IMG/VR virus record: IMGVR_UViG_3300042340_000379
Span: 62,001 to 126,000 of that record
DNA length: 64,000 nt
Strand: one strand, 5' to 3'
Position 1 is the first letter of the stretch. Each line of letters starts with the position of its first letter. A program made the translations under genes and the position numbers. The notes below the pieces were generated by a model. That model saw only the letters and a list, made by a program, of their open reading frames with translations. It did no database searches and was not told the DNA's origin. Shown one piece after another: positions 20,078 through 49,200 of this stretch.

Positions 20078-21697
20078 ATGCCAGACACATCTTGGGACGC
20101 TATCTTCAACGCGACTCATACCATTCTTATTTCAGAATCAGGGAGAATCACCAAAAGCTCTCAAGGATTCGCTAATCTTCTAGGCTACACTCAATCAGCC
20201 TTAGAAGAAATGAACTATCGCAACATTGTCCATCTTGCTGATCGCGATCAAGATGAAGCTTTGTTTAAGGATCTTTTTAACGGAAACCAAACTCATTTTA
20301 ATTCCGAAGAGCGCTACATCCATAAAGAGGGATATACCATTTGGGTTCATATCATTAGCACTCTCTATGTTGAAGATGGGGCTAGGTTTATTGTAACTGT
20401 CCATGACATCACTACTCAAAAAGAGAAAGAGCTGTGTGTAGAACATTTATCTACACACGATGGTTTAACAAATCTCTACAACCGAGCCTTTTTCACAGAA
20501 TCCCTAAAGCAGACAATTGTAAAATGCTCGCGCTATTCTTGTGAAGACTATCTGTTCTACCTAGATATCAACACGTTTAAGCAAATTAATGACGACTATG
20601 GCCAAGAGGTCGGTGACCTCTGCTTAAAAATTATTGCCTCTAGGTTAACAAGTATATTTAGAAATACAGATGAAATCTTTAGAGTGAGCGGCGATGAGTT
20701 TGCCATCATTGTTCATAACGTCCAGAGTGAAGAAGCGCTTACGTACCTAATCTCAAGAATACAAAAAGAGCTTGATAAACCCATTCTCTCTGTAGCCAAC
20801 AACTTAACTGTTTCAATAACTCTGTCTCTCAGTCTGGGTGTGTGCAAACTAACTCATATATCCTCTCCATCAGATGCTCTCGCCATTGTTCAAAGATCTC
20901 TTCAGAAATCTAAAGCTGCGGAAGGGCAAACTATAGAGTGGGCATCATCTAAAGAAATCTATGAAGAGATAGAACTTGAACGGGAGATCCGTCAAGCAAT
21001 CCTCAAAGAAGACTTTGTTGTTTATTATCAGCCAATCAGAAATCTAAGTGACATGTCTCTCGCGGGGCATGAAGCGCTGCTCAGATGGCCTAAGAAAAAC
21101 ATATCCCCGATTACTATCTTAGAGATAGCCGAAAAGCTCAATCTAGTAGAACAACTTGAATGGAACTTATTTAAAAAGATTTTGAAGGTTGCTTCTTCTG
21201 AAGGGCTAGCCAAAAGATGGATTTCTGTTAATCTAAATTCACTGCTGCACGCTAAAAACTTTCGGGCAGAACTTACCCAACTTCTAAAAGACTACGATGT
21301 AAATCGAGACAGTATTGCGTTCGAGGTTATTGAAACTATCCGGCATAGCGACCCGGTTGTGCGCCTTTTAATAGACATTCAAAATGACGGCCACTCTCTT
21401 AAGCTAGATGACTTTGCACGCGATTATGCCTCGTTTGTATGGTTAAAGACACTCCCTCTAGATAGCGTAAAAATTGACCGTGAGTTTATCCACGGTATTG
21501 CTAAGGATAAACACAAAAAGCTGCAAGCTATCACCAGCGCTATGATTGATGTCTGCCACTCTCTTGGAATAAAGGTTGTCGCGGAAGGAATTCAAAGAGC
21601 TGATGATCTTGAGTGGCTAAAGCTAGCGGGCTGCGATCAAGGGCAGGGATTTCACCCATCTTTAGGAATACCTAGTAAAGATTTGCAGAAAAGATAG
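20078..21697 (+). CDS. PAS-GGDEF-EAL c-di-GMP cyclase/phosphodiesterase
   Basis: PAS (HKEG..IWV...HDIT), D.LT.LYNR, FKQIND.YG..GD, RNTD I-site, SGDEF, YQPI, EALLRW, DDF, KID, AEG. Confidence 0.92.
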   Translation: MPDTSWDAIFNATHTILISESGRITKSSQGFANLLGYTQSALEEMNYRNIVHLADRDQDEALFKDLFNGNQTHFNSEERYIHKEGYTIWVHIISTLYVEDGARFIVTVHDITTQKEKELCVEHLSTHDGLTNLYNRAFFTESLKQTIVKCSRYSCEDYLFYLDINTFKQINDDYGQEVGDLCLKIIASRLTSIFRNTDEIFRVSGDEFAIIVHNVQSEEALTYLISRIQKELDKPILSVANNLTVSITLSLSLGVCKLTHISSPSDALAIVQRSLQKSKAAEGQTIEWASSKEIYEEIELEREIRQAILKEDFVVYYQPIRNLSDMSLAGHEALLRWPKKNISPITILEIAEKLNLVEQLEWNLFKKILKVASSEGLAKRWISVNLNSLLHAKNFRAELTQLLKDYDVNRDSIAFEVIETIRHSDPVVRLLIDIQNDGHSLKLDDFARDYASFVWLKTLPLDSVKIDREFIHGIAKDKHKKLQAITSAMIDVCHSLGIKVVAEGIQRADDLEWLKLAGCDQGQGFHPSLGIPSKDLQKR

Positions 21698-23102: not shown

Positions 23103-23309
23103 ATGTCAGATCAATCACAACCCGTACAACTCTCTTTGGAACAACAGTTTAGTCTGCGATCGTTTGAAGCTCAAGTTAACCGCATGAATCTTGAGCAGGC
23201 CCAGCAGTTTCTAGTCATGCTCTACGAGCAGATGATGTACAGAGAAAATACGTATAAGTCCTTAATCAAATCAGATCTACTAGGCATAAGCCGACCAATG
23301 TACCCATGA
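23103..23309 (+). CDS. nblA: Phycobilisome degradation protein NblA
   Basis: LSLEQQFSLRSFEAQVNRMNLEQAQQFLVMLYEQMMYREN.YK.L; GGAG RBS before ATG 23103. Confidence 0.95.
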   Translation: MSDQSQPVQLSLEQQFSLRSFEAQVNRMNLEQAQQFLVMLYEQMMYRENTYKSLIKSDLLGISRPMYP

Positions 23310-24126: not shown

Positions 24127-24794
24127 TTAGCTTCAGCCGGTTTAATGGCGTAACCAACTTCTTTGGCGTCGAGCCCACCCTCAGTGGTGGGATTTCAATG
24201 ACTATCCACGCCGCTGAAGTTAACCATGACCTAAACCGTGATTGGTATTTTGGAAGATCGCGGCTTGTTGAAATTGAGATGAGCGCTCATCAATTTGCTG
24301 AACTCATCACAAATATGAATCGCGGGCCGGGTATTCCCTGCACAATCAAGCACATCGCGGGGCATGACATAGAAAAGTATGTCCCAATGCCTACCGTTAG
24401 AGAAAAGTTTGACGAAAATTTAACGGATAGTCTTTCTGAGCTTGAACGTAGGGCCGCAGCTCTTCATCAAGAAATTGCCGACCTCAAAAATGATAAAGGT
24501 AAAGCCGGTAAAAAAGATCTGGAAGTTCTTACTGGAAAAGCAGAGATGTTACTCAGGCAAATTAAGAGCAACCTGCCCTTCCTGACGCAATCGTTCTCAG
24601 AACAGCTGGACAACCAAGTGCTTAAAGCAAAGGTTGAGTTTACAGCCTATGTTGATAGTCAAGTCTACGCTCATGGGCTTGACGCCCTGGGAATTCAAGC
24701 AACCCTACCCGCCGCTGAAGAAAGTCCCGAGCAGGTTGACACTCCCCGACCTGAAGGTGCGGGGATTCTTGGTTCACTGACCGGACTTAACTAA
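24081..24794 (+). CDS. Hypothetical phage protein; C-terminus replaced by IS sequence
   Basis: Removing the element at 24736-26058 restores ...ESPEQDKLEG-stop. Confidence 0.75.
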   Translation: MSDKETRYEHSSYGLISFSRFNGVTNFFGVEPTLSGGISMTIHAAEVNHDLNRDWYFGRSRLVEIEMSAHQFAELITNMNRGPGIPCTIKHIAGHDIEKYVPMPTVREKFDENLTDSLSELERRAAALHQEIADLKNDKGKAGKKDLEVLTGKAEMLLRQIKSNLPFLTQSFSEQLDNQVLKAKVEFTAYVDSQVYAHGLDALGIQATLPAAEESPEQVDTPRPEGAGILGSLTGLN

Positions 24795-24890
24795 GCAGGA
24801 TTTCTCCAACTTAGTCAGAGGCTCAATCTCCCCAAGCGTTATAGTTTGGATCTGCCCGACCCTACTTAATCCAAGTTTCAGGATGTTAAT
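24716..24890 (-). ncRNA. Predicted omegaRNA of element 1 (5' end approximate)
   Basis: Established TnpB architecture: scaffold overlaps the tnpB 3' end and right end; guide is the flank CCTGCTCGGGACTTTC.... Confidence 0.5.
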
Positions 24891-26058
24891 GGCTGCATTT
24901 ACGTCTCTATCTTCCATGTAGCCACAGTTAGGGCAAACGTGGGTTCTGACAGAGAGTGCTTTCTTAACTCTTGTTCCACAGTTAGAGCAATCTTGACTGG
25001 TATAGTGTGCGGGAACGGCGACAGCAATCTTTCCGTACTTACCAGCAAAATATTCTAACCATTTACGAAACGTTGACCATCCTGAATCACTAATCGACTT
25101 AGCTAGGTGGCGATTCTTAACCAACCCTTTCACATTCAAGTCTTCATAGGCGATCAAATCGTTAGATTGAACTAAACGCAGTGCCTTATTTTTAAGCCAC
25201 TCAACACGCTGCCTACTTACTCTTAAATGATTTAGGACGTACCGCTTTCTAGCTTTCTGATAGTTCTTGGATTGAGGTTTAGATCCTTTACGGAATTTCT
25301 TAGACTTTCTACGGTTGGCTCTATTCAACTGCTCCTCAGATTTGCGGTAAAACTTGGGGGATTCTACAAACTCGCCATTGCTAGTGGCGAAGAAGTATTT
25401 AATCCCTAAGTCAATCCCGACCGTGTTGTGGGTAGGCTCCGACTCTACTGTGCTGTCTGCCTGAATGCAGAATTGAACGTAGTAACCGTCAGCCCGCTTA
25501 ACCAAACGAACACGCTTGATCTGACTTTCATTATAGAAAGATAGATCATAGGTGCCAATTAAGCGTAACTCCCCAATATCAAAACCATCGGTAAACTTAA
25601 TCCGTTTTGGCTCAAGTAACTTCCATCCAGAGGTTTTGTATTCTACTGAACGTCCATTCTTTTTGAACTTAGGGAATCCTTTCTTACCCTTGGTTTTCTT
25701 TTTGCAGTTGTCATAGAACCGACTGATTGAACTCCAAGCCCTCTCAGCCGAAGCTTGCCGAGCCATAGAGTTGAGTTTTTTAGCAAACGGAAATTCCTCA
25801 GCTAACTCCTTGCAGAGTTTGTTGAGATCATATTTTCCTACTTTCTCATTATCCATCCAGTAACGAAGCGCTTTATTCCTCACGAATTGACTCGTGCGAA
25901 TGGCTTCGTCAATAGCTGACGATTGAGAAGGTTTTGTCCGTGCTTTGAACTCTAGTACAATCATATTCTTATGCTAACAGCTTCAGCATAAAATGACAAC
26001 AAAATAGCTAATTAACTAAGCCGTCCTAGAAGGACGGGGTTTTAGACCCAGTTTTTTG
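24736..26058 (-). mobile_element. Non-autonomous IS200/IS605-family element 1 (tnpB only)
   Basis: Left end TTAT|CAAAAAACTGGGTCTAAAA plus hairpin; right end GAAT-hairpin-TCAA; the empty site restores the interrupted gene. Confidence 0.88.
24774..25964 (-). CDS. tnpB: RNA-guided endonuclease TnpB
   Basis: RuvC GIDLG, YEDL, DRDVNAA and Zn finger CSNC...CPNC all intact. Confidence 0.95.
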   Translation of the reverse strand: MIVLEFKARTKPSQSSAIDEAIRTSQFVRNKALRYWMDNEKVGKYDLNKLCKELAEEFPFAKKLNSMARQASAERAWSSISRFYDNCKKKTKGKKGFPKFKKNGRSVEYKTSGWKLLEPKRIKFTDGFDIGELRLIGTYDLSFYNESQIKRVRLVKRADGYYVQFCIQADSTVESEPTHNTVGIDLGIKYFFATSNGEFVESPKFYRKSEEQLNRANRRKSKKFRKGSKPQSKNYQKARKRYVLNHLRVSRQRVEWLKNKALRLVQSNDLIAYEDLNVKGLVKNRHLAKSISDSGWSTFRKWLEYFAGKYGKIAVAVPAHYTSQDCSNCGTRVKKALSVRTHVCPNCGYMEDRDVNAAINILKLGLSRVGQIQTITLGEIEPLTKLEKSCLVKSGQ

Positions 26059-26747: not shown

Positions 26748-28009
26748 CTAAAGAGACGTGGATTCTTGAGCAATCCAAATTTGGATTCTCAAAGGCGCAA
26801 TCAAAGCACCCCTACTGACTCCATCGAGGTTGACCCTCAACTTTGCCGCTACTTTTCTCAGGATATTCGCCGCGCCATTGCAGTCAGCGTTGATCTTGAT
26901 GCCATCTTTAGATCGATACAGACCACGCTTAACCCGCTTACCAGACTCTTGCCACCCTTCGGGTTTTGCACCGAATGTAGGTAGTTCATCTTGGTCGATA
27001 AAGCTGGCTTTACTAGCGTAGCTTTCCTCAGTCTCGACAAAAACGATCCCGTACTGCTCACATAATTGAGCGATCCGATCCTTTAGTCGGCCTGTTGGGA
27101 TCTGGACAAACTTTTGATTTGTCTTGCTACCCAGGTTGATTCCTTGGCGCTGCCCCTGGTTCCAACCAAAAACAACAGAGCCGATCCTTTTCTCAATGCA
27201 ATGGTTGATCACAATCCGGGCTGTTTTATTTACAGCATCCCTAACTTGACGGTTTCTCTTCTCAGTAATCCCGGCTAGCTGCTTAGACCAAAAACCCTGT
27301 GGTTGATTTTCCTTAAGGATCGAAACCCTTTTGTTATACCACTGGTTCAAAGACTTTAAGTGCAGGCCATCCACAAAAAAGGACGTGCCCACATTGCTGA
27401 CACAAGTGATCCAGTTATTCAGACCTGGGTCAATCCCCAGCACGTTAGCGGGGTCTACGTCAGTCTTTACTGGCTCTACCTTATAGATCAATTCAAGGTA
27501 GAAAACACCATTCCTAGGCAAAATCCGATATTCCCGGATCGACTTAAAATCAAGGTTTGTGGGCATTGGCATATAGAAGGCGTCTAAGCCAAACCACGCT
27601 TTAACCTGACGACCCAGGGGGAACCGTAGACCTTCAGGCTTTAACTCAACGTCAGCCCCTGGGTAGGTGACTAAGTTTAACCCAGGCTTCCGGTAGTTTG
27701 GCAGCTTAGGCTTCTGAGAGACTGTCCCTTTTTCACGCCTTTTAGCAAACCGAAGAAGGACTTAAAAGACTCTGCTACTGTGGTCAAACATTGCTGGGAA
27801 ACGTGAGACTGCATCGCCTTAAAATGGGGGTTCCCTTTTAACTCACGGTGTAAATCAAACTTGGACGGAGCTTTACCTATCTTGAAGTAAAGTTGACGAG
27901 ACAAATAGGTACCACAGTTATGTAGCTTATTTGACTCCCCACAAAGAAACTCAAGGACTCCTTTTAGCTGGGGGTCTGGGTTGATTAAAACTTGCTGGCA
28001 TCCAAACAT
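26748..28009 (-). pseudogene. tnpB: TnpB split by a one-base frameshift near 27725-27733
   Basis: The frame changes at AAA AAG GGA; the -1 frame continues TVSQKPKLPNYRK...GIDPG...EESYAS...INADCNGAANI. Confidence 0.85.
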
Positions 28010-28067: not shown

Positions 28068-28220
28068 ATGCCAACAAAAAAACATCCTATCCCTGCTTAC
28101 CTAGATGATGCAGAATTTCAGATGCTAAGGAAGATCGCAGAAGACTGGGGCTGTAGCCTATCGGCAGCAATTAAGCGATTAATCCGGGAAGAAAGCCGTC
28201 CTGAAGGACGGGGCTTGTGA
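28068..28220 (+). CDS. Ribbon-helix-helix (CopG-like) protein inside element 2 (not in ORF track)
   Basis: MPTKKHPIPAYLDDAEFQMLRKIAEDWGCSLSAAIKRLIREE...; divergent from tnpB. Confidence 0.7.
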   Translation: MPTKKHPIPAYLDDAEFQMLRKIAEDWGCSLSAAIKRLIREESRPEGRGL

Positions 28221-28758: not shown

Positions 28759-28775
28759 CAAAACGTCACATCTTC

Positions 28776-28811
28776 AAAAAAGCCACCTCTGATTTCTAGA
28801 GGTGGCTTTTT
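28776..28811. terminator. Bidirectional intrinsic terminator
   Basis: AAAAAAGCCACCTCT-GATTTCT-AGAGGTGGCTTTTT. Confidence 0.85.
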
Positions 28812-28818
28812 GCTAAAC

Positions 28819-29134
28819 GGCTGAGAAAAATGGATAACAAGGCTGATAAGAATAGACATAGGAGGTTTAAGTTGAAACTTAGTCTATAGTTTAACCCACT
28901 TTTAAGTAAAGCAGTAAGTAACGCTTTAGTGATATCAACGTCAAGTGCCTAAAACTTATAGCTGACAAGACTTTCAAAATCAACATAATCCTCTGGTGCT
29001 ACCTGCGCAGTAGCACTAGGAAAACAAAAAACTTCTTAGCTTATAAAAGTTGAGAGCCGTGGAACCCTTGATGTGTCTACGTTCCAGCCTTATAAATATA
29101 AAAGGCAGTTCTAAACACAGGATAAGGATAGACA
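28819..29134. other. Candidate intact attP site
   Basis: Core-like inverted repeat CTGGTGCTAC-[CTGCGCA]-GTAGCACTAG (28993-29019); arm-like direct repeats at 28819, 28841 and 29121; integrase about 0.5 kb away. Confidence 0.55.
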
Positions 29135-29270
29135 AAAATTCGTAGAAATTAGTAAAAATCTGCGCCTATTTAAGGAAATTTTTAAGTAAGGGGTTTTTCC
29201 TTAATGTTGGGCAGATGCTTGAAAAGGCAAGAGTGTAAGATTGGAAAGAACATCTAGAGAAAAATCTCCT

Positions 29271-29582
29271 ATGCTATCCCTAGCCAAAGCGTTTGCAATC
29301 CTGAGCATTATGAACAACCTGAAAGGCGAATATGATAAAGCTATGAAAGATGGTGAGCTGACTTTTGAAGAGCTCAGTGACCTTATCATTGGTTTTATCG
29401 TCGGCCTTGCCAAAGCCCTTATGCCCAGCATGCCCGATCAAGTTGTTGCAAAGCTAGAGGCTCTTGTCGAATCTCTAGCAAATTCCAAAGAAAAAGTTGA
29501 AGCTCGAGTTATGGAAGTGACCGCAATTCTTGATAAAGCCGACGGGGTTTACGAGAAGTTTCAGGCCCAAGTTCGAGCCTAG
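29271..29582 (+). CDS. Hypothetical helical protein
   Basis: ATG at 29271; lies between the attP candidate and the integrase. Confidence 0.6.
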   Translation: MLSLAKAFAILSIMNNLKGEYDKAMKDGELTFEELSDLIIGFIVGLAKALMPSMPDQVVAKLEALVESLANSKEKVEARVMEVTAILDKADGVYEKFQAQVRA

Positions 29583-29632: not shown

Positions 29633-30976
29633 ATGGCAAGTAGTATTGAGGCCGACTTAAATCGGGCTAACGAACAGCTTAAATCAGAGAGGGTTTCCGT
29701 TAAGATTAAACGTCGCGGGAACGCTCTCTTTTTAGTTGGTACCCTCCCACCTAAACCTTCCTCTAAAAAACAAAAGCCTCACCAACAAGAAATCTCTCTC
29801 AAGAAACTTCAAGCAGAACACGCCAATATTCTTTACGCGCAAGAACAGGCCCGCCGAGTTGATAGAGACCTGAAGAACAGTAAGTTTGATTGGAGCGAAT
29901 ACTCTTCTAAAATCTATGCAGAAACCCACAAAACAATTGGGGTACTTCTAGAAGAGTTTAAAAAAGACTATTGGCAAATGCACCCAAAAGGTAAGACTAG
30001 CGAGATTAACTGGCATAGATCCTACTGGGCTTTCTTTAAAAAATTAGACTTAAAAGCAGAACTTAGCCTCAAAGAACTTATTAAAGTTATTGAGAAATAC
30101 GAGCCTGATACTCAGAGCCGGTCAAAGTGCTGCCAAAAATTTGTAAAGTTTGCTGAGTGGTGCGATCTACCTACGTCTGACATTAGAAAAATCCGCTCTC
30201 TAAAAGGAAAGTACGGAATCTCCAAAACTAGAAAAAGAAAAATCCTAACTGATCAACAAATTGTAGATCTTAGAGTTCAAATTCCTCCCGGCCCCCTGAG
30301 ATGGATGTTTGAAGTCTTAGTCGTGTGGGGACTTAGACCCCACGAGGTCTATGAGATTGATATGGAGAAACTTGCGGTAGAACGAGACGGCATTATAACA
30401 GTTTTTAGCCAAAAGACTAAACGGGAGCGCATTGTATCAGCCATTTACCCTGAATGGTTTAAGAGGTGGGAGTTGTGGAAAGGAATGCCACCTCCCACCA
30501 ACAGAGAAAGAGAAAAAGGCAAAACAGTTACTTACTACTTTAAGAAACTCAACCTCGAAATTTATCCTTATGATCTAAGGCATGCTTGGGCTGTTAGAGC
30601 TCTCTACTACCCAAAAATTGATGAGGCTCAAGCCGCCGCTCAGATGGGGCATTCTCTAAAAATCCACCAACAAGTTTACGAATACTGGATTACAGAGCAA
30701 CGAGCTCGAGCAGAACAACTTAAGAGAATGTACGGAGATGAAAAGATTGAGGTTCCTGACGACCCTCCAGAAGGAGATTACCGGCAAATTCGCCTTAAAG
30801 ACGACCCCCTTAACGCGGAACGCCACCCACAAAACTACTCTTTAATCCCATGCCCAAAGTGCGGGTCAAACTCAGTCATCTGGAATGGCTGGGCGATCAA
30901 CCAAGATAAACTTTATGGGCGCAGACAGAAATGCCAAGTATGTAATTTCATCAAGACGATCAAGCCCACAGCTTAG
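29633..30976 (+). CDS. Tyrosine integrase (cyanobacterial type) with C-terminal Zn ribbon
   Basis: GLRPHE, KT, YDLRHAWAVR, MGHS...H...Y; C-terminal CPKC...CQVC. Confidence 0.9.
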   Translation: MASSIEADLNRANEQLKSERVSVKIKRRGNALFLVGTLPPKPSSKKQKPHQQEISLKKLQAEHANILYAQEQARRVDRDLKNSKFDWSEYSSKIYAETHKTIGVLLEEFKKDYWQMHPKGKTSEINWHRSYWAFFKKLDLKAELSLKELIKVIEKYEPDTQSRSKCCQKFVKFAEWCDLPTSDIRKIRSLKGKYGISKTRKRKILTDQQIVDLRVQIPPGPLRWMFEVLVVWGLRPHEVYEIDMEKLAVERDGIITVFSQKTKRERIVSAIYPEWFKRWELWKGMPPPTNREREKGKTVTYYFKKLNLEIYPYDLRHAWAVRALYYPKIDEAQAAAQMGHSLKIHQQVYEYWITEQRARAEQLKRMYGDEKIEVPDDPPEGDYRQIRLKDDPLNAERHPQNYSLIPCPKCGSNSVIWNGWAINQDKLYGRRQKCQVCNFIKTIKPTA

Positions 30977-32692: not shown

Positions 32693-32696
32693 TCAA

Positions 32697-32769
32697 GCCG
32701 TGTTAGCTCAGTTGGTAGAGCAGTTGGCCTGTACCCAACGTGTCGCGGGTTCGAGCCCTGCATACGGCT
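32697..32769 (+). tRNA. tRNA-Thr(UGU), no encoded CCA
   Basis: Full cloverleaf: GCCGTGT/ATACGGC, GCTC/GAGC, GTTGG-CCTGTAC-CCAAC, GCGGG-TTCGAGC-CCTGC. Confidence 0.9.
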
Positions 32770-32839
32770 TTAACAATCAATAAGAAAATATGAATATCAC
32801 AATACGGCACTGCCTGCGATCTGTAGAAGAAAGAATCAT

Positions 32840-34119
32840 CGAAGAAATGGGTCTGAAACCCCGCCGTTTTAGGGCGGCTTGCATTTTACGTGCTAGAATG
32901 TGAGCATGACACAGAAAGCGTTTAAGTACCGATTCTATCCAACACCTGAGCAGGAATCTTTGCTCAGGCGAACGATGGGCGGCACCCGTCTTGTCTATAA
33001 CCGAGCACTGGCCGCAAGGACTGAAGCTTGGTATGAACGACAGGAACGGGTGGGGTACGTTGAAACGTCGGCTATGCTCACCGAATGGAAAAAAGATGAA
33101 AGTCTTTTGTTCCTGAATGAAGTGAGTTGTGTGCCTCTGCAACAAGGGTTGCGGCATCTGCAAACCGCCTTCACAAATTTCTTTGCGGGTCGGGCGAAAT
33201 ATCCCAACTTCAAGAAGAAGAGGAATGGTGGTAGTGCTGAGTTCACCAAGTCAGCGTTTAGGTTCAAGGACGGTCAGGTATTCCTGGCCAAGTGCTCTGA
33301 ACCATTGCCGATTCGCTGGAGTCGTGCCCTGCCTGAGGGTGCTGAACCCTCCACAATAACGATCAAGCTGACTCCCTCTGGGAAGTGGTTTGTCTCGTTG
33401 TTGGTGGATGTTGAGATTGAACCTTTGCCTACGGTTATGGCCAAGATCGGCCTTGACCTGGGCATCAATAGTTTGTTGGCGCTGAGCACTGGGGAGAAGG
33501 TCGCCAACCCGAAGATCTTTCGGGCTAAGCACAAAGCTCTCAAGAAAGCTCAGAAAGCGCTGGCACGTAAGCAGAAAGGGTCTAACAATCGCTACAAGGC
33601 ACGGCTCAAAGTAGCCCGTGCTCACGAAGCGATTGTCAACGCCCGCAAAGATTTCCTTCACAAGCTGACAACTCGATTGGTGCGCGAAAACCAAACCATC
33701 GCCGTCGAAGACTTGGCTGTGAAGAATATGGTGAAGAACCGTAGCCTCGCCCTCTCCATCAGTGATGCGAGTTGGGGTGAGTTGGTTCGGCAGCTTGAGT
33801 ACAAGTGCGATTGGTACGGCAGGGAATTGGTCAAGATTGACCGTTGGTTCCCATCCTCGAAGCGGTGCAGCCAATGCGGCCACACCGTCGAAAAACTGCC
33901 TCTCAACATTCGCTCTTGGGATTGCCCTAGTTGTGGTGCTCACCATGATCGGGATGTCAATGCTGCAAAAAATGTCTTGGCCGCTGGGCTAGCGGTGTCA
34001 GTCTGTGGAGCGACCGTAAGACCCGAACAGAGTAAGTCTGTGAAGGCTGGTGCTACGAAGCAGAAAAACTCCTGAGCGATCAGGGGAATCCCCTTCCTTT
34101 AGGTGGGGGAGCATGTCAA
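32840..34119 (+). mobile_element. Non-autonomous IS200/IS605-family element 3 (tnpB only)
   Basis: Left end TCAT|CGAAGAAATGGGTCTGAAA plus hairpin; right end GAAT-hairpin-TCAA; higher GC than flanks. Confidence 0.88.
32906..34075 (+). CDS. tnpB: RNA-guided endonuclease TnpB
   Basis: KYRFYPT HTH, GLDLG, VEDL, CSQC...CPSC, DRDVNAA. Confidence 0.95.
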   Translation: MTQKAFKYRFYPTPEQESLLRRTMGGTRLVYNRALAARTEAWYERQERVGYVETSAMLTEWKKDESLLFLNEVSCVPLQQGLRHLQTAFTNFFAGRAKYPNFKKKRNGGSAEFTKSAFRFKDGQVFLAKCSEPLPIRWSRALPEGAEPSTITIKLTPSGKWFVSLLVDVEIEPLPTVMAKIGLDLGINSLLALSTGEKVANPKIFRAKHKALKKAQKALARKQKGSNNRYKARLKVARAHEAIVNARKDFLHKLTTRLVRENQTIAVEDLAVKNMVKNRSLALSISDASWGELVRQLEYKCDWYGRELVKIDRWFPSSKRCSQCGHTVEKLPLNIRSWDCPSCGAHHDRDVNAAKNVLAAGLAVSVCGATVRPEQSKSVKAGATKQKNS

Positions 34120-40286: not shown

Positions 40287-43200
40287 TTAAACCAAAAGAG
40301 CAACAAAAGATGGATCTGCAGTATTACTAGCCGCTACTCGGTTGCTAGCATGGAAATGATCCGATGCAGACTGTTGTTGTTTAATTGAGATTCTGTTTGA
40401 TTGGGCGTCATAAGAAACTACATGTTCAGTATTTTGAGAAGCTGAAGGCCTTGGATTAGGATTTGAGGGTTGTCTACTTGAAACTTGTTGAACAGAAACA
40501 GTTCCGCGAACAGGCTGAACTTCAGGAGCTTTAACTTCTTGTGGAGTATAAGTTTGAACTGCAGCTCCAACTGTCATTGGTAATTCTTGTGCTCGTTGTC
40601 TCGCTTGAGTTTCACGCACTCTTACTCTTTGAGCCCCTCTTCTAAATAGATCCAATCCAAGAGTTAGGCCAGGAATAAACGTAGAAGCTAAAGCCCGCGC
40701 TGACTGATTAAACAAGTTAAACGCCCGCTTGAAAAACCCTGGCTTCTCTTTTGTGTAAGAAGAGGGGGATCGGTTAGCTACTTGGTCGATATAGCTTTCA
40801 GCATTTGTGTTATCACCAACCAGCCGCTGCTGGATAGATCCTCCCAAAAGTCGGTCAACAGCTTCTCGAGCATCCCTAAGAAGTCGGTCTGGGTGAGATT
40901 TGTAATAGCTAGCTGTTCCTAAAACTGAGCCTAATTTCCGACCTCCATAATTTGCCAGGTCAGAACCAAGAGTGTCAATAGTAACGCCAAGCGCAATCAT
41001 GCCAAGACCAAGGCCCGCACCTACACCAGTTGCCGTTACAGCCGCTCCCGTTGCGTAAAGACTTTTAGCTAAAATTGACATGGGAAGCGTAGCCGCTAAT
41101 CGAAACGCACCCCCAACTGCTTGAGAATAAGCCAGTTGATGCTGCTCTTTTGAAGAGCCATAATTAAGAGAAAAAGCTTTCTTTAAACCAGAGAACACAT
41201 CATAAGCCCCGATGCCATATTCAACAACATCAAAAATCCTCCCAGCAAACCAAGCCCCACTCTTAGCCACCTTAGTCGCACTAATAGCTTTTGTTGTATT
41301 CGCAGTCCAGCTAGCCGCGCCAATGCCTAACCGCCCTAAAGCTCGACCTCCTCGTCCAACCCCTCGGGCTACTCTACTTGATTGCTCAGCCTGTCGAGCT
41401 GCTTGAAGAGAAAGATGGAGTCCAGACTTAGCTGCTTGCTGCACAGCTTGATTTGAATTAACCGCTCCAGCTCGAAGCGCTTCGTACAGGCGAGCAGTTT
41501 TTGTATTCCGGCTAGCAACTGACTGAGTATAAGAACTCATCATATTAAACAGATCGTCGGTCTGATTTAACATCCCAGATTCTCGGGCGTAGCTCATTGA
41601 CCTAGACATTCTGGAAAACTCAGCATTCTGGGCATAATTTACTAAGGGCTCGAGATTACCAGATGCTCTACCTGCTTTAGCCAAAGAGAGAAGTTGGGGA
41701 GCATGTCGAATTAATCGAGAAGTCTTAAGGCTAAAGAGAGTGTTAGACACAGCCCCCACAACTAGATCTGTTTCAGTAGCTCTTCCCTTAGCCATAAATT
41801 CAGCTCGCCGCTCAGACCTAGCTGCTATTAGTGGGGCAAGTCCAATAGAAGCGAGCACACCTACAAGATCATTCTTAAACGCCGCTGTTATACCAAAGGC
41901 CGCTATTGTTTGAAGAGCTGAAGAGTATGTTGATTTAACATATCGTTCGCGAGTACCGCCAGAGAAATTATCGGCTCCCATTAATAACCGCATGTTATTA
42001 GCCATTCCTACGCCAAGAACGCCGTAACTACCAACTCTAAACGCTCCAGAAAGAACTCCCCCTCTGCGCATAGCGTAATCAAGCGCTTTGTGGCGAACTC
42101 CCCCAGTCACCGCGCCTCTAAATAGTTGAGCAAATATTTTGGTGTGCATAGCTTGAGCAGGTTTAGCTAAATACGCTAGCCCTATACCAACCGCAGCTCC
42201 TACATAAGCCCCTTTAGAATCATCATCATCAAGGCTATTTCCAATAAGATGACCCACCATAGCGCCAATGCCAGCCATTCCTATATAACGGTTAAAAACT
42301 CGGAAAGAACTTCTTACCTGATTTCGAGCACCGTATTGAGTTGCGGCAGAAATTCCCCCAGCAATAGCCGCACCTGCTACTCCAGTAACAGAAATCCCAT
42401 CATTTTCTCTACTAGAGAAACGATCACCTATTAGATAACCTAAAGCTCCAAAACCTCCAGTAAATCCAGCCTGAGATAGAGGGGCTAACAGTGAAGACAA
42501 TCGCTTAGCCTGAGACATGTAAGCAGCCCCAGCAAAAGCAGCGACGGTCGCGCCGACCATTACATTAATGTTTCCCTCAAACAATTTGTTGTAAGCGGCT
42601 ACTGAGAGGCCAGCCGCAATTGCTGCCATAGCTGCTGCCGTTCCCAGTTTGAAGCCTTTAGCCAGATTGATAGTAAGAGAACGCTGCTTAGCTAGCTTCT
42701 GAAAAATTCCTGAAGACTTAACCCGATTAAGTAAACCTGAAAACCGGCTTTGTCTAGCTATATGACCAGAAGCTATAAGCTCAATCGCAGTATGGCGAAT
42801 AGACCCGCTATAAACTAAAGCAGCGGTCGCAGCACCCCCGGCCCCCGCCAGTAAAAAACTCTTTTCGTCATCATTTTGTAAGTAGTAAAGTGCAGCCATA
42901 GACAAAGCGCCCGCGACTAGTGATCGCCCACCTCCTGACCTAAAAATTCCCCCTTCTAGGTAGCGTTCATACTCAAAAGCCGCGACTGAGTTTATAACGT
43001 TTTGTAGAGAACGGGTTGCTTGACGCACACCCTTAAACCCAAACTTATGCTTGACCGCGTAAGTGATAAGATTATCAACCGTTCCGCTTAGCTGGGGTAA
43101 AAGTAGATGAGCCTTTTTCTGAGCTAATGAGAGAATCTGGGTTTTGTATAAACCTGAGGCACCCCCAAGTGCTAAACCTAAAACAGTTCCGTACACTCCA

Positions 43201-46200
43201 AAAGTAGAACCAAACTGCGCTCCAATAGCCGCTCCAACAAAACTTGAAGCAGTAAGTGTGGTAGGAGAGCGGTACTTAAGAATTTGAGAAGCACTTAAAG
43301 CGCCAGTCACACCAAACGCGATGTTAGTAAGCTTTTGAGTACTACGGTCGTCCGGACTAGACGCAATTAAACCTAAAGCTGCACCACCCAAAGCTATAGA
43401 GAACACTTTCCGATTCATTAGCCCAAGCTTAATCCGACCTTTAAGATCAGGACGGGTTACAGCCAAAACGTTGCCAGTCGGATTTGTTAGATTTCCTCTA
43501 TATGTCGAGATTGAGGAAGCTTGAGACATGTAACCCGATCGCGCCATGGGAGGAAGAATTGCTATACCAGCTCCAATAGAACCCCCTAACATAATGCCAA
43601 AAGTGTTTCTATCATCGCGGCCCCCATCTCGGGTATAGCCATAACCAAAAGCGTGTCTGGCAAGAATAGAGCCAGCTAAAAACCCGGCTCCTGCTCGTGC
43701 GCCATACTTAGCTGTCTGCTTAGCAAGATACACACCGGGTTTTTCAATCCCTTGCTTGCCAAGATGCTCAGCTACTCTAGTTTTTAACCCTAAAACAACA
43801 CCCTTAACTTTAGGCAGGGTTCTTTGAATATCATCGTTAAGAGCAGGCGCTGCCATCCGAAGCGTGAACTCAGTCGAAACACCCGGCATAATAATACCGT
43901 CAGCCGATGCGTCTCTCATCACCTCGCTAATGTAGTCGTTACCTCGCCCGGTGATGTCAAGACCTAAAAACTGCCCACCAAAACCGATCGCGTATAGAAG
44001 TGCTTTACTCCCTGCTGCTAGGCCTGCCATAGAGCCAATAAAAGAGAGCATTGCGCCCTGGTTTTGACTCACATTAGTTTGAGCAATCTCAACAGCTCGT
44101 GAAACCCGACCTCCAGTTGGTCGGGGATCTAGCATGTACTGATAAAAGTCAGCTCGGTTACGATATGTAGCGAACAAGTTTAGAGCTGGATCAGCGATGC
44201 TCATTACATCCGCCGCGCCCAAACGACTACCAGAGTACAACTTTGCAGCTGGTAAAACACCCTCTGCCTGTTTAACCAGAGCCCCTCCTTGAGAAGCTTC
44301 ATAGTTGTTCTTTGTTTGAAGAAGCTCAGCTTCTAACTCAAGACGCTTATTGTAAGAAAGGTCGGGGTTTAGAAGCTCAGCTTCTATTCGGGTCTTTATA
44401 TTTTCAGACCGCGCCATTTCCTGATTAATCAAATCAAGCTCATCAGCTTTGATGGTATACGAGCGACTCGAAATATCAGGATTATTTAGGTGCTTAATGA
44501 GACCCTGGTAAACATCAACGTTAGCGTTAACGTCAGCCATAGCAGTGTGAGCGTTTTGCAGTGGCTCTCCCGCGATTGCCTCATAAATAGAGCCAAGGTT
44601 GGAGCGAGCAGCACCTAATTCTCTATACCGCTTGGGGTCAATATCATTAAGCGTGTCAATATAGCGGCCTTGAGTTACTGCTTTATCCAGTTTTTTAACC
44701 AAGTCATGCCGACCCAGCCGGTGCATTGTCGCTTGGAGAACTGGAATGTCAAACTTAGAAATGTTGTGGCCAGCTAGAACAGCACCATCAAGCTGACCCA
44801 TTAATTCTTCAAGAACATCTCCTGCTGCCTTACCTTTAGCCAGATCATCTAAGTTAAACTTACCCCCGGTCATTTCACTGGGGTCATAGTAGGGCTGCAC
44901 AAGATAACGATTCTCAGAAAGACTTTGAACCCGCCCAGTTTGAGTGTCTATAGTAATTTTTCGGTAGGCTACTTCCGCAATAGGAGGGCGCGATCCTGGA
45001 TCAGTCTCAGAAAGATCTGTTCGAGCTGAGTAGGATGTTTCAAGGTCAAAGAATAAAAGATTTTGATAGCGGGGTAAGTCTTTGATTGTTTTTAGCTTTG
45101 GCGGATCAGCATGATTTACTAGCTTGTCAATTGGAGTGTTAGTTCTAGACTTTACTGACTGGAGGTCAGGATTCATTACTGAAGTAAACTCAGCGCGATC
45201 AAAATCTCGAATACCATCGCTGCTCTTACTTTGAGAAGATCGTTTGGCTGATTTGCTTTGGTCTTTACGCCCAATCGTCCGCTTAATAGGGTCCTCAGAA
45301 CCACTGGATAAATCGTGGATGCTCTGAACCATGTGACCCGATTCAAACGAGAACGTTCCATCGTGATAAGTAGCCCCCTGCATAAGGCGGTCGAAAATAG
45401 GATGGGTGTTATCTAACTGGATAGCATTAGCACCAAGCTTGTCTAAGTTCCCTTGGAATAGACCAGTCTTAGTGTTCTGATATCCTTCAAATCGGCCCCT
45501 ACTCTGCCGATCATCTATAGTTTGGACAATACGGCTAGCGCGGGAAACACCGTACTTGTTACGCTGCTTGATAAATGCGCGAGAGTTAGCCTCAAACTCC
45601 TGCTCATAAATTTGCTGATAACCAATATGGTCGAGATTTTGATTGTTAGCTAATGCCCCTTGAGCTGAGCGTTGAGCCAACCTATCAATAGATGTAATAA
45701 CGTCAGAAGATGCGCCTGCTTGAGTCAAGAGCTTCTGATTGCCAAGAAGATCCCGACTCGCCGTAAAGCCTGGGCGATTAAATTCCTTAAGATGCTTTCT
45801 AGCCTGGCGAACGTGCATCTTCTCGTGAAGAAGCTCAAATTCAGCCATCTGGTAGCGCATCGAGTTACGGGGAGACTTGAGCCTCGCCTGCAAACTCTCG
45901 CTCATATCGATTCGAGGATTCCCGTTACCATCAAACGACACCTCACTTCTGGAGAGGTTAGCAATCATTCGAGAACGAATAGTCGAGTAAACCGAGAGGC
46001 TTGAAGCGATAATCGCGGAGGCGTAGAGTTTATTGCGGCTATCCTTATATTCATGGACATCATATTGAGCCATCCGGTAGCCCATGCGGTCGCCTATCGC
46101 AAAACCCATGACACCTAAAGCGACAACCGACAAAAGCGATCGCCCTTGAAGCGCACCAATAGAACTGGCGATAGCGCTGAACGAAGAACCCAAAGATTCT

Positions 46201-49200
46201 CTATAAGCCGCAGCGACATTCTCACCCGTCTGCCGGTCAGGCTGACTCTCCATTACTCGGCGGGTCGCGCCAAACATAGAGTACATATCAATAAAAGCTG
46301 GGCCCATGTCTTTAAGAACAGTGCCTGTCTGGCGCAAGTTTCTCCCCATACGAGAAGAAGTCTTACGTAAGCGCATAGCCAAAATCTGACCGTCAGTTAA
46401 AGCAGGGCCAACAGCAGAAGGGGCTGGAGGCAGCAAACCAAAAGGGGTAAACTCTTTAACAGGCTGCAAAAGTCCAAACGGAGTAAAAGCCGCTGGGGCA
46501 TAACCAGGGCTAACAGGTGTCTGGATTTGAGGGACGTTCTTAATCGCGTCGTAGATTTTACCCACTCCGCCCGCCGCTTCATTAATAACAGTGGATGAAA
46601 TAAATGATGAGGCAGTAGAGACACCCAAGAATGCAGCCGTTGCAAGTTTCTGCATTTCAAACAGAGTCTGGCTAGCGACAGGTTCAAAAAACCGCCCGAC
46701 CTGTTGAATAGGTAATAGCACTCCTGGCCGATGAGTAACGTAACGAAGGTTCCTCATCCCTCGGGAAAAGCCTCTCCGCGCAATTCTCGTCTGAACTTTA
46801 AAGCTCGGAATGGTCACATCAGGAAAAATAACTTGCACGTTAGGCAAGTGCATCCCAAACTTAGGTCGCCGCATTAGCATTTGGCGTCTAAATAACTGAC
46901 CGGGATTAGCAGCTTGAAGATTCTTTGCTCCCTTTACATACCCAGAAATGTCGGCAAACTCTTCTCTTAGTTGAGGGAGAATACTGCTGTTCAGTTGCCG
47001 AGCCATTTTTGAAGTGGAAGCATAGGCAGACATTAAGCCTAAAGCTACCCGATTATCTTCAGCAGGCGCAGGCCGACGCATCATTGCACCATATATTGCG
47101 TAATTACCCATGTCCTGACGCCGCTCAAGAGCCATTCTCATCGTCGGACTTAAACGATTCATGCTTGAGATAGAAAAGCTCGAGATAATAGAAGGCATAA
47201 TTCTCTCTCGAGAATTAAAGTAGCGCTCACTGTAGTAGTTGTCTAAAAATCCATAAGCAGAACCACGCACGTTTGCTTGAACCGGAATCTCTCCACCCAC
47301 AGACATAAAACTAGATAAGCCCCGACTCATCTTGTTTCTGTGGTAGATGTCCTGGTTATAAACAAACGGCTCTGAGCCTGTAAACGTTTTTTGGGCTTCT
47401 TTATAAATCTGCTGTTTGTATAGAGATTGGGGTAAAAGAATGCTAGTAGCAATCGCCATCGCCATACTACGGGAGCCCTTAGCATAAGTCTCACCAATCT
47501 TTTCTCCCATAGGCTCAAAGATTGTACCAACTAAAGCATCTCCTAATGGGCCGGTTGCTTTGCTGACTAGGCTGCTAACACCTGAGACTAAGCCAGCTGC
47601 AAAAGATGTAAATCCACGCTCGACAGAAACAATACCTTGGGCTAATCTAGAATTTTTAAAAGACTCAAAGTTGACGGACATGATTGCACCCGCCAAGAGC
47701 ATAGCTGGTAAATTAGCCTTTCCACTAAATAAAACCTTTGAGATAACCCGCTCAAGACCATAGGCAAGACCTAGCTGACTAGACGCTCGAACTAACTGAA
47801 GAGATGCCTGGTCGCGGAGACGATCTTCACTTGATAGTAAGTAAGCAGATGATTCAGCAAGAGTATAAACATCCTGACCGTAGGAAGCATAAAATGCAGT
47901 AACTCTACCTGCTCCCATTACAGCGTTCATCACATCTTCCGTGATAGGTCGAACAGTTGGAGCACCTCTAACAGTCTCAAAGACTTTCTCGACTTTTACA
48001 TTGTTTGTGGTGTCTATCTCACCTAGTCGCATCATATGTTGCTCAAAAGCCTGAGCTTCAAGCTGAGCCCGCCGAATGTTTAGGCGAGACAGCCTATCTC
48101 CAGATGAGAGGCGTCTATTATTCTTGAGCGTATTAGCATAGTCTTCCAGCTCACCATAAGACTCAGGGGCAATCATCGCCTCAAGCTTTTGGGTAAAATC
48201 GCCAGTGTAAAGCACTTCATAGCGCTTTGGATTTAACCCCATTGTTTCTTCTAACAAAGGCTCTTGCATAAACGCATAAATCTTCTGCTGAAAATCTGAT
48301 GCAAGATTACTTTTAACATCCCGGCCCTCTAGCAAATCCTGCATGTACGGAGACATAGAACCAATATGGTCAGCTACCGTGCGCGTTAAAGTACCATAGG
48401 TTTTCATAACCTGATACCAATATGCTCTTTGAGTAAGCTGCATGCCCTCAGGCATAGCAATCTTATAAGCCGCTGTAATAACCTCTTTGTCTTTAGAAAA
48501 GAGCTGGGCGACAGCTTTAGTGTCAGATTTATGAGTATCAAACCGCCCGCTTCGAGCTACTCTATAGAAATCTCGAACAACATCCTTAAGCGCGTCGTTT
48601 CTAAGCCCTATACTCTCACCTAAAAACGCTCGTTCCATCCCACCCGTAACCGTAGCTAATGCAATACCCGTTGAAGCTAAAGTACCAATCGATAAGGCTG
48701 TAGAAATAGAACCAAGCAAAGCGGTTGAACCAGCGGTCTGCCCCTGGTCGCTATAGGCTTTATTTATCCCCCCGATTTGAGTAAAGAAACCGGATTTAGC
48801 AGTGTAATAATGTTGAGATGTAATATTAACTATCAAATCATCTAGGGTTTCGCGGCTCCCTCTTGCTGTGTAAGTTCCCTGAAAAGCGCTGGCTAAGTCA
48901 ATAGATAAAGCCTGAAGTGGGTCATATCCTTGATAGGGAACTTTTCCTAGAGATGTTGAAGTACGCCCTAGAAGAATACCTTCCTTAAGTTGGTCAATCG
49001 CAAGCTCACTTGCCCGCTGCATAGAAATCCAGCGCATGGTAAATTCGCGTCGGGCAAATGCAGTTTGAAGAGTAGAGCTAGTCAGCGCTCGCTGCTCATA
49101 CATTGTTATACCGTCAACCCGCATCTTTTTGCGACGAGAGACAGCGCCTCTATACATCGCAAGAATTTCTTCTGCAGCAGCAGGACTTTCATCAAGCCTA

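What the first reader, a model, noticed from the sequence alone, without database searches (positions are those of the whole stretch)
28819..29134. Intact attP-like site suggests a large temperate cyanomyovirus in free form
Seen: 10-bp inverted arms around a 7-bp spacer CTGCGCA; direct repeats GGCTGAGAAAAATGGATA, GGCTGATAAGAATAGACA and GATAAGGATAGACA on both sides; imperfect palindromes near 28951-28976 and 29061-29086; integrase and Xis-like genes nearby; phage genes on both flanks. Known: lambda-type attP has core sites with a 7-bp overlap plus arm sites. A large cyanophage with its own replication and dNTP kit plus integration would be notable.
Basis: partly seen in the sequence, partly recalled or inferred. 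Interest (0 to 1): 0.6.

Follow-up and report, generated by a model that had tools for sequence, protein, structure and literature searches.

The report
Probable attP beside cyanophage XisA-like integrase
A 510-base non-coding stretch in a complete 208-kb virus of cyanobacteria carries clustered repeats just upstream of a XisA/XisC-family recombinase gene, which is the layout of a phage attachment site, but no integrated copy or host target was found, so integration is not shown.

Summary
The described features are at the stated coordinates. Taken singly they are weak. A 10-7-10 inverted repeat of this quality occurs 85 times in the genome. Such a palindrome, or a 13/14 direct repeat, arises in about 8% of composition-matched random sequences.

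The context is stronger. The contig closes on itself, so it is a free phage of 207.7 kb with a tail-sheath gene. Its only tyrosine recombinase (29633-30976) belongs to the cyanobacterial XisA/XisC family, has a full catalytic set and folds like full-length lambda Int. A small MerR/HTH_17-type gene follows it.

A second motif, TTAAG[GT]AA, has 4 of its 23 genome copies within 303 bp here. Three phage lineages (recombinases 42-45% identical) keep the module order, and the two with readable DNA keep the same site layout: one distal site, then a cluster of two direct and one inverted site. Unrelated viral contigs with XisAC-type recombinases show the same plan around a tRNA 3'-half-like fragment.

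I read the region as an attP-type recombination and control region (confidence 0.5). The crossover point is unproven, because the palindrome is not conserved. No attB, prophage or junction was found. A match of the palindrome to class I aldolase genes is at chance level. "Temperate" is unproven.

The parts
28777..28811 (+). Terminator-like hairpin (14-bp perfect stem, 7-nt loop, flanked by A and T runs) that ends the upstream gene set. It marks the left edge of the non-coding region.
   Evidence: I3; sequence
28819..28858 (+). Two tandem copies of the GGCTGA...(T)AGACA repeat, 22 bp apart (28819-28836, 28841-28858). Candidate distal arm-type sites.
   Evidence: 2 of the genome's 6 GGCTGA[GT]AA copies
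28902..28909 (+). Distal TTAAGTAA site.
   Evidence: An equivalent distal copy lies 258 bp upstream of the proximal cluster in L003 and L086.
28962..28989 (+). Sigma-70-like promoter match (CTGACA, 16 nt, CATAAT; 10 of 12) directly upstream of the palindrome.
   Evidence: A consensus match only.
28993..29019 (.). 10-7-10 inverted repeat. It is the only core-type candidate between the repeat clusters. The crossover site is not shown.
   Evidence: Not above chance and not conserved in L003/L086.
29028..29114 (+). The only block alignable with the related phage L003 (63% over 87 nt). It holds the shared 11-mer TAGCTTATAAA (29037-29047), probably the -10 region of the recombinase-operon promoter.
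   Evidence: The promoter reading is by eye.
29071..29091 (-). Inverted, degenerate copy of the GGCTG...TAGACA repeat.
   Evidence: I2, 71% complementary over 21 nt
29117..29134 (+). Third direct copy of the repeat (14-mer, 13 of 14 identical to 28845-28858).
29170..29204 (.). Proximal cluster of three TTAAG[GT]AA sites: 29170 (+), 29182 (+), 29197 (-). It lies inside a 21-nt-arm imperfect inverted repeat (29158-29216). The same two-direct-one-inverted cluster abuts the recombinase start codon in L003 and L086.
   Evidence: (I1)
29271..29582 (+). 103-aa ORF (113 aa from TTG at 29241) between the cis-region and the recombinase gene. No family match, predicted helical. The related phages L003/L086 have no counterpart at this position.
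29633..30976 (+). XisA/XisC-family tyrosine recombinase, 447 aa. Catalytic R235, K261, Y313 (where most family members of the wider superfamily have His), R316, H340, Y349. It has an extra N-terminal alpha-beta domain (1-95) and a C-terminal zinc ribbon (about 405-447) found only in the phage clade.
30960..31235 (-). 91-aa MerR/HTH_17-type small DNA-binding protein, convergent with the recombinase gene. Candidate excisionase or regulator, conserved in related phages.
   Evidence: HTH_17 E 1e-4, below cut-off; 34% identity to the L003 neighbour, E 2e-11; a 72% homologue carries PF00376
31260..32651 (+). DUF932 protein, 463 aa. The last conserved member of the module.

Best explanation
The AT-rich spacer 28812-29240 is the cis-acting recombination and control region (attP-type) of a conserved phage module: cis-region, XisA/XisC-family tyrosine recombinase, small MerR/HTH_17 protein, DUF932 protein.

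Inferred mechanism:
- The recombinase has three lambda-Int-like domains. Through its extra N-terminal domain it binds repeated sites at both edges of the spacer. These are the distal TTAAGTAA and the GGCTGA...TAGACA pair on the left, and the TTAAG[GT]AA cluster and further TAGACA copies on the right.
- The roughly 270 bp between them is wrapped, and strand exchange takes place in the middle. The 28993-29019 inverted repeat is the only formal core candidate there.
- The same sites overlap two promoter-like elements, so occupancy would also regulate the operon that contains the recombinase gene.
- The small HTH protein would set direction or repress.
- The partner site in a cyanobacterial chromosome is unknown.

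Shown: the sequence features, their local enrichment, the recombinase family and its catalytic residues, the fold, the conserved synteny, and the free genome form.

Inferred: binding, the crossover position, and integration itself.
For: 1. Recombinase.
- It is intact and is the only tyrosine recombinase in the genome.
- It carries the Pfam families XisAC_N and XisAC_2nd.
- The AF2 model has pLDDT 87. The best structural matches are full-length lambda Int (1z1b, Foldseek E 9e-7; VIA Z 13.2 over model 6-367 against chain 8-356).

2. Family habit.
- In gene-interrupting elements the xis gene lies at the element end that its 5' end faces, so the recombination site lies upstream of the gene (Hilton et al. 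2016, PMC4874684).
- Among 41 IMG/VR contigs with relatives, about ten have the gene within 2 kb of a contig end, reading inward.
- Five of them have a tRNA gene 150-330 bp upstream of the recombinase gene.

3. Shared plan in L245/L246/L250.
- L246 has phage-type genes on both sides of the module.
- A repeat sits at about -246 and at -18 from the start codon.
- A tRNA 3'-half-like fragment lies between these repeats, at about -165 to -125.

4. TTAAG[GT]AA sites.
- 4 of the 23 genome copies lie within 303 bp here.
- The layout of one distal site plus a cluster of two direct and one inverted site recurs in L003, L086 and L087, whose recombinases are only 42% identical.

5. The module order recurs in three further phage lineages.

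6. A conserved Xis-like HTH gene is adjacent.

7. The genome holds no second copy of the site, which excludes an inversion switch.

8. The genome closes on itself and is unsplit in four samples.
Against: - No attB, prophage or junction was found.
- No homologue of the module's DUF932 protein was found in 301 cyanobacterial genomes.
- The palindrome is not conserved in related phages and is not beyond chance.
- The N-terminal domain folded alone matches arm-binding domains only weakly: 3jtz Z 3.8 and the lambda N-domain Z 3.4. Unrelated folds score higher.
- No S24/CI-type or HTH_3 repressor and no ParA/ParB were detected.
- The genome is otherwise that of a large, self-sufficient, lytic-looking phage, with RNR, thymidylate synthase, primase and helicase.
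- The conserved block looks like a promoter, so all conserved cis-features could be purely regulatory.
Confidence: 0.5

Rival explanations
1. The region is purely regulatory. It would hold a terminator, one or two promoters, and operator sites (the TTAAG[GT]AA cluster and the palindrome) for the small HTH protein or for autoregulation of the ORF-recombinase operon. The recombination site would lie elsewhere, or the recombinase would no longer be used for integration.
For: - A promoter-like match lies at 28962-28989, directly before the palindrome.
- The only block conserved with L003 reads as a -35/-10 pair.
- In L003 and L086 the proximal site cluster overlaps the start codon and ribosome-binding region of the recombinase gene.
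- A 10-7-10 palindrome is also a typical dimeric-repressor operator.
- A conserved HTH gene is adjacent.
Against: - Relatives of this recombinase family place a tRNA-derived core inside the same kind of repeat frame upstream of the gene.
- An operator role does not explain a distal site kept 260-280 bp away in three lineages.
- attP and the int promoter commonly overlap, so this rival is not exclusive of the best explanation.
Confidence: 0.2
2. The region is a Cre/loxP-like or Xer/dif-like site. The recombinase would act on the palindrome only between phage genomes, to circularise terminally redundant DNA or resolve multimers, with no chromosomal integration.
For: - There is a single simple inverted repeat with a 7-bp spacer next to the recombinase gene.
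- No attB or prophage was found.
- The genome is large and probably terminally redundant or permuted.
- A 42-member clade of chromosomal family members has a conserved location next to ferrochelatase, which suggests a housekeeping rather than a mobile role for part of the family.
Against: - The recombinase has an extra N-terminal domain and aligns with full-length lambda Int rather than best with Cre or Xer.
- Repeat clusters flank the site.
- An Xis-like gene is adjacent.
- No ParA/ParB was found for a plasmid prophage.
- The palindrome is not conserved in sister phages.
Confidence: 0.13
3. The region is an iteron-type replication origin. The direct repeats would bind an initiator and the AT-rich DNA would unwind.
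For: - GC is 36% here against 45% for the genome.
- Two repeats are phased at 22 bp.
- The replication gene cluster lies 10-25 kb upstream.
Against: - Only two copies are tandem.
- No initiator gene is adjacent; the neighbour is a recombinase.
- There is no inflection of cumulative GC skew at genome position 90.8 kb. The minimum is at 136 kb.
- The repeats differ in sequence between related phages while the recombinase module is conserved.
Confidence: 0.05
4. The region encodes a small non-coding RNA or a structured 5' leader. The palindrome and the other stems would be RNA hairpins.
For: - A promoter-like site lies just upstream of the palindrome.
- The 251-nt fold has a z-score of -1.9, with the palindrome as a stable hairpin.
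Against: - No Rfam match at E up to 1.
- The z-score is modest (6 of 200 shuffles fold as well).
- The hairpin is not conserved in related phages.
Confidence: 0.05

Closest known systems
Bacteriophage lambda attP with Int and Xis (heterobivalent tyrosine integrase)
   Same: - The recombinase has a three-domain fold whose best structural match is full-length lambda Int.
- Repeated sites lie on both sides of a central inverted repeat with a 7-bp spacer.
- A small HTH gene lies next to int.
- The region spans about 390 bp.
   Different: - Sequence identity to lambda Int is about 16%.
- Tyr replaces the first catalytic His.
- The site lies upstream of the gene's 5' end, not beyond its 3' end (lambda's gene order is from general knowledge).
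- There is a C-terminal zinc ribbon.
- Arm-binding by the N-domain is not shown.
- No attB is known.
XisA/nifD-element and XisC/hupL-element excision systems of heterocyst-forming cyanobacteria
   Same: - Same protein family (XisAC_N plus XisAC_2nd).
- The recombination site is expected just upstream of the recombinase gene (PMC4874684).
   Different: - Those are chromosomal remnants that interrupt genes and only excise. Here the module sits in a complete 208-kb phage with phage genes on both sides.
- The phage proteins form a separate long branch outside all 79 chromosomal relatives sampled.
- They carry an extra zinc ribbon.
- Identity is at most 37%.
IMG/VR viral contigs L245, L246, L250, L263 and L267 with XisAC-type recombinases beside tRNA genes
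   Same: - Same recombinase family (26-32% identity).
- The repeat frame has one copy at about -246 and one at the start codon.
- The presumed core lies between them, 125-165 bp upstream of the gene.
   Different: - Those carry a tRNA gene or a tRNA 3'-half-like fragment as an obvious core.
- They share no other gene with this phage and are much smaller contigs.
- L246 has an HTH_3 repressor-like neighbour.
- The window has no tRNA-like core.
P1 Cre/loxP
   Same: - A single short inverted repeat with an asymmetric spacer lies next to the recombinase gene of a large phage.
- The catalytic and core-binding domains align (Z about 11).
   Different: - Cre has no extra N-terminal domain, no flanking repeats and no Xis-like partner.
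- P1 is a plasmid prophage with partition genes. No partition genes were found here.
T7-like marine cyanophage int/attP (PMC8776855)
   Same: A cyanophage of lytic appearance that carries an integrase and an attP-like site.
   Different: - That is a podovirus with a tRNA-matching attP and a different integrase family.
- The paper's title and abstract report integration without lysogeny. This warns against reading 'temperate' from the genes alone.

Membership tests
Lambda-type (arm plus core) attP | An adjacent, catalytically complete tyrosine recombinase | tested here: met
   R235, K261, R316, H340 and Y349 are invariant or nearly so in 65 sequences, and Y313 is nearly invariant. It is the only PF00589-like gene in the genome.
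Lambda-type (arm plus core) attP | The integrase has a separate N-terminal arm-binding domain | tested here: inconclusive
   An extra helix, three-strand, helix domain (residues 1-95) is present, and full-length lambda Int aligns from residue 6 or 16. Folded alone, the domain matches the HPI Int arm-binding domain only at Z 3.8 and the lambda N-domain at Z 3.4, below unrelated folds at Z 5.
Lambda-type (arm plus core) attP | Core: two inverted recombinase sites around a 6-8 bp overlap | tested here: inconclusive
   28993-29019 fits formally and is the only such repeat with arms of 8 nt or more in the central part of the region; the one other such repeat lies within the proximal site cluster. 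However, there are 85 such repeats in the genome, 8% of random regions have one, and it is not conserved in L003/L086.
Lambda-type (arm plus core) attP | Repeated arm-type sites on both sides of the core, different in sequence from the core | tested here: met
   Two repeat families flank the centre. The TTAAG[GT]AA layout is conserved in related phages. Binding itself was not tested.
Lambda-type (arm plus core) attP | A stretch identical to a host attB | tested here: not met
   The only match is 19 nt exact (24 of 26 in a second genome) to class I aldolase genes. Control queries give equally good chance hits. The host is unknown, so absence is not shown.
Lambda-type (arm plus core) attP | Prophage copies split at the site (attL and attR) | tested here: not met
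Read-level junctions could not be examined.
XisA/XisC recombinase family | XisAC_N and XisAC_2nd domains followed by a tyrosine-recombinase catalytic domain | tested here: met
   Precomputed Pfam PF27551 and PF27132 on P0001 and its relatives. The local Pfam copy lacks these models and gives only a weak PF00589 hit. E is 1e-56 or better to cyanobacterial members.
XisA/XisC recombinase family | Developmentally regulated excision of a gene-interrupting element | tested here: not met
   The gene lies in a free phage with phage genes on both sides. The phage clade lies outside the chromosomal clades.
Cre/loxP or Xer/dif simple site | A two-domain recombinase acting on one short palindrome without accessory repeats or a directionality factor | tested here: not met
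   There is an extra N-terminal domain and a zinc ribbon, flanking repeat clusters and an adjacent HTH gene.
Iteron origin of replication | Several phased tandem iterons, an adjacent initiator gene and a strand-composition switch | tested here: not met
   Only two copies are tandem. The neighbour is a recombinase. There is no skew inflection at this position.

The most novel reading that the evidence does not exclude
The phage is a living, free counterpart of the 'interruption elements' of cyanobacteria. Under this reading it uses its XisA/XisC-family integrase to insert into a conserved protein-coding gene rather than a tRNA. The candidate target is the ILWCYLR(N/S)S codons of the class I fructose-bisphosphate aldolase gene, which match the left arm, the spacer and part of the right arm of the 28993-29019 palindrome (19 nt exact, 24 of 26). 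Insertion would split the gene until excision. That would give direct support to the long-standing idea that the nifD and hupL elements descend from phages.
Probability: 0.1. Interest if true: 0.8.

Novelty: new variant of a known kind. Interest (0 to 1): 0.45.

Why it matters
- Sequenced temperate cyanophages are few (PMC8776855; bioRxiv 10.1101/325100, abstracts). No tblastn match to this recombinase was found in 50,697 GenBank phage records.
- The elements that interrupt nif and hup genes in heterocyst formers have been hypothesised to be phage remnants (PMC4874684). A complete 208-kb contractile-tailed phage that carries the same recombinase family, with an intact upstream site and an Xis-like partner, would be the kind of ancestor that idea needs.
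- It also offers a testable recombinase-plus-site pair of possible use for genetic tools in cyanobacteria.
- If the site is only regulatory, or acts only in phage-phage resolution, the finding is of ordinary interest.

Tried and rejected
2. Near-identical phages. Megablast of 20 kb against GenBank phages found nothing.
3. attB by BLAST against five cyanobacterial genomes. The top hit was class I aldolase. I followed it with pattern searches in 401 and 52 genomes, a metagenome scan and a viral scan. I demoted it to a lead for three reasons: control queries give equal E-values, all but one of the metagenome hits are ordinary aldolase genes, and no aldolase fragment lies beside any of the 80 chromosomal or 41 viral XisAC loci.
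4. A family-wide arm motif in the 79 chromosomal upstream regions. None was found. The enriched word turned out to be the start of a divergent ferrochelatase gene. One Nostoc locus (L027) has many GTCTACAG copies that resemble the window's TAGACA, but this is not general.
5. IS/TnpB ends as the source of the repeats. Rejected, because the region has no other copy in the genome and is separated from the nearest tnpB by three small ORFs.
6. Rfam families. None matched.
7. Inversion switch. Rejected, because there is no second site.
8. Plasmid-prophage lifestyle. No ParA or ParB was found.
9. Closer relatives of the recombinase by exhaustive HMMER. Only a 45% lineage whose DNA could not be fetched and a 63% gene fragment without upstream DNA were found.
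10. Calibrating the core distance on Nostoc loci. There the recombinase follows small zinc-ribbon ORFs in an operon, so they are not comparable.

Full report
**What the window is.** The window is bases 62001-126000 of a 207,855-base IMG/VR virus record, rated 97% complete and classed 'linear'. The first 145 bases recur at the very end of the contig, differing by one G in a homopolymer run. The assembly therefore closes on itself and has no host flanks.
- The window encodes helicase, thymidylate synthase, primase, an exonuclease, ribonucleotide reductase, a MazG-like protein and a baseplate wedge protein.
- It also encodes NblA and a PAS-GGDEF-EAL protein.
- The genome has a tail-sheath C-terminal domain above Pfam's cut-off.
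- Three TnpB (IS605 OrfB) genes are present, one of them broken. The intact one is 80-95% identical to cyanobacterial copies.
- A cyanobacterial host and a contractile tail are thus supported. The host genus is unknown.

**The observation.** The finding lies in the non-coding stretch 28759-29270. This runs between a 110-aa ORF that ends in a perfect terminator-like hairpin (28777-28811) and a 103-aa ORF (29271-29582) that precedes the recombinase gene.
- The inverted repeat with a 7-bp spacer (28993-29019), the two tandem repeats (28819 and 28841, 22 bp apart) and the 13/14 copy at 29121 are all there.
- A degenerate inverted copy lies at 29071-29091.
- The two further 'palindromes' are poor.
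- Inverted repeats of this quality occur 85 times in the genome.
- In 400 composition-matched random 512-mers, 31 had such an inverted repeat and 34 had such a direct repeat.
- The region is AT-rich, 36% GC against 45%, and has no second copy in the genome.

**A stronger signal.** TTAAG[GT]AA occurs 23 times in the genome. Four copies lie within 303 bp here: 28902 (+), 29170 (+), 29182 (+) and 29197 (-) (Poisson P about 5e-8, motif chosen after the fact).

I chose this motif because it is the repeat unit of the equivalent region in related phage contigs. In L003/L004, L086 and L087 the recombinases are 42% identical to the window's. They are preceded by an 18-nt repeat ending in TTAAGTAAG, arranged as follows:
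- two tandem copies 21 bp apart;
- one copy 258 bp further on;
- an inverted copy overlapping the start codon.

The layout of a distal site plus a proximal cluster of two direct and one inverted site is therefore kept in the two lineages with readable DNA, while most of the sequence between the sites is not alignable. Only 29028-29114 aligns with L003 (63%, E 0.005). It shares an 11-mer that reads as the -10 part of a promoter. In L086 and L087 that 11-mer is half of an 8-7-8 inverted repeat. The window's palindrome has no counterpart in those phages.

**The recombinase.** The 447-aa protein hits Pfam's Phage_integrase only weakly in the local library. It carries the newer families XisAC_N and XisAC_2nd in precomputed annotation.
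- An alignment of 65 relatives keeps R235, R316, H340 and Y349 invariant. K261 and Y313 are nearly invariant, with Tyr at the position of the first catalytic His.
- The AlphaFold model (pLDDT 87) matches full-length lambda integrase best: 1z1b at Foldseek E 9e-7, and VIA Z 13.2 over model 6-367 against chain 8-356.
- The protein therefore has an extra N-terminal domain where lambda Int has its arm-binding domain.
- Folded alone, that domain resembles known arm-binding domains only at noise level. This point stays open.
- The phage clade alone has a C-terminal zinc ribbon.

- On a quick tree the four phage proteins form a separate long branch.
- A well-supported clade of 42 includes 29 genes that sit divergently next to a gene beginning MGRVGVLLLNLGGP, which I read as ferrochelatase. 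That suggests a fixed chromosomal orthologue in that clade.
- No relative exists in 50,697 GenBank phage records.
- 41 IMG/VR contigs have one. About ten of these genes lie within 2 kb of a contig end and read inward. Five have a tRNA gene 150-330 bp upstream.
- L246 has phage-type genes on both sides of the module. In L245, L246 and L250 a repeat stands at about -246 and at the start codon. Between them, 125-165 bp upstream, lies a fragment with a tRNA T-arm and acceptor-like end, read by eye.
- This is the ordinary signature of a tRNA-targeting attP, and it has the same frame as the window's region.
- Hilton et al. (PMC4874684) report that xis genes of interruption elements lie at the element end that their 5' end faces. 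This again puts the site upstream of the gene.

**Neighbours.** A 91-aa convergent gene has a weak HTH_17/MerR match. It is conserved next to the recombinase in related phages, and a 72% homologue carries PF00376. It is a fair excisionase or regulator candidate. A DUF932 gene completes a module found in four lineages. The genome shows no other tyrosine recombinase, no S24 or HTH_3 repressor, and no ParA/ParB.

**Search for the partner site.**
- All contigs with the identical recombinase, from four samples, are unsplit and identical or nearly so across the region.
- BLAST of the region against five cyanobacterial genomes gave a best hit (E 0.03) that falls on the left arm and spacer of the palindrome. 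It is 19 nt exact, inside the class I fructose-bisphosphate aldolase gene at the codons ILWCYLRN.
- A second genome matches 24 of 26 and extends into the right arm. Four of 52 genomes of that genome's family are within 3 mismatches.
- Control queries from the related phages give equally good chance hits.
- The 19-mer is simply a frequent coding of a conserved aldolase motif. There were at least 120 metagenome hits; all but one are ordinary aldolase genes and none joins phage sequence. No viral contig carries the 19-mer, and no XisAC locus has an aldolase fragment beside it.
- I keep the aldolase match as a lead only.
- The DUF932 protein has no homologue in 301 genomes of one cyanobacterial order.

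**Verdict.** The best reading is an attP-type recombination and control region for a XisA/XisC-family integrase module (0.5). The crossover point is undetermined and integration is unproven. The rivals are a purely regulatory region (0.2), a lox/dif-like phage-phage site (0.13), an origin (0.05) and an RNA element (0.05); chance accounts for the remainder. 'Temperate' does not follow from these genes: T7-like cyanophages integrate without lysogeny (PMC8776855).

The novelty lies in the recombinase family and its zinc-ribbon phage clade inside a large contractile-tailed cyanophage, not in the kind of site.

Noticed in passing
genome 1-145 and 207711-207855 (outside the window): The contig's ends overlap by 145 bases, with a one-base difference in a G run. 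IMG/VR classes the record as linear, yet the assembly is in fact closed (circular or circularly permuted).
   Followed up: yes
window 20078-21697: The phage encodes a 539-aa PAS-GGDEF-EAL protein, a domain set typical of cyclic-di-GMP turnover. This is unusual cargo for a phage.
   Followed up: no
window 23103-23309: A 68-aa NblA (phycobilisome degradation) gene. Related phage contigs L003 and L086 also carry one, just upstream of their recombinase module.
   Followed up: no
window 24774-25964 (-), 26748-28009 (-), 32900-34075 (+): Three TnpB (IS605 OrfB / Cas12f-like) genes lie within 10 kb of the recombinase. The middle one is split into two ORFs. The third lies 130 bp after the phage's tRNA-Thr (32696-32770) and is 95% identical to copies in metagenomes.
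   Followed up: partly
window 40287-53492 (-): A giant 4401-aa ORF with an SNase domain in precomputed annotation. The related phage L086 has a 4477-aa counterpart with PLDc_2.
   Followed up: no
loci L020, L028, L030, L032, L033, L035-L037, L039, L042-L045 and others: In 27 of the 80 loci sampled, the XisAC-family recombinase sits divergently, 77-430 bp away, from a gene beginning MGRVGVLLLNLGGP (ferrochelatase by my reading). On the tree, all loci carrying this sequence signature fall within one well-supported clade of 42. A fixed chromosomal position suggests a housekeeping role, possibly chromosome dimer resolution.
   Followed up: partly
L027 817-1060 and 1109-1342: Upstream of a Nostoc XisAC-type recombinase lie at least seven copies of GTCTACAG/CTGTAGAC, including a 47-bp near-perfect palindrome, and a small zinc-ribbon ORF that overlaps the recombinase start. 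In the phage clade a zinc ribbon is fused to the recombinase C-terminus instead.
   Followed up: partly
L003 7444-7650 (and L086 9505-9715): An uncalled ORF of about 66 codons for a small hydrophobic protein. It is revealed by third-codon-position substitutions between L003 and L086, and it shortens the real non-coding region there to about 290 bp.
   Followed up: partly
L003 7680-7724 and L086 9745-9785: A terminator-like hairpin upstream of the recombinase keeps its pairing through compensatory changes between the two phages.
   Followed up: no
window 28068-28220: A 50-aa ORF with weak ribbon-helix-helix matches (E about 0.01) lies 540 bp upstream of the region. It is another possible small regulator.
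   Followed up: no
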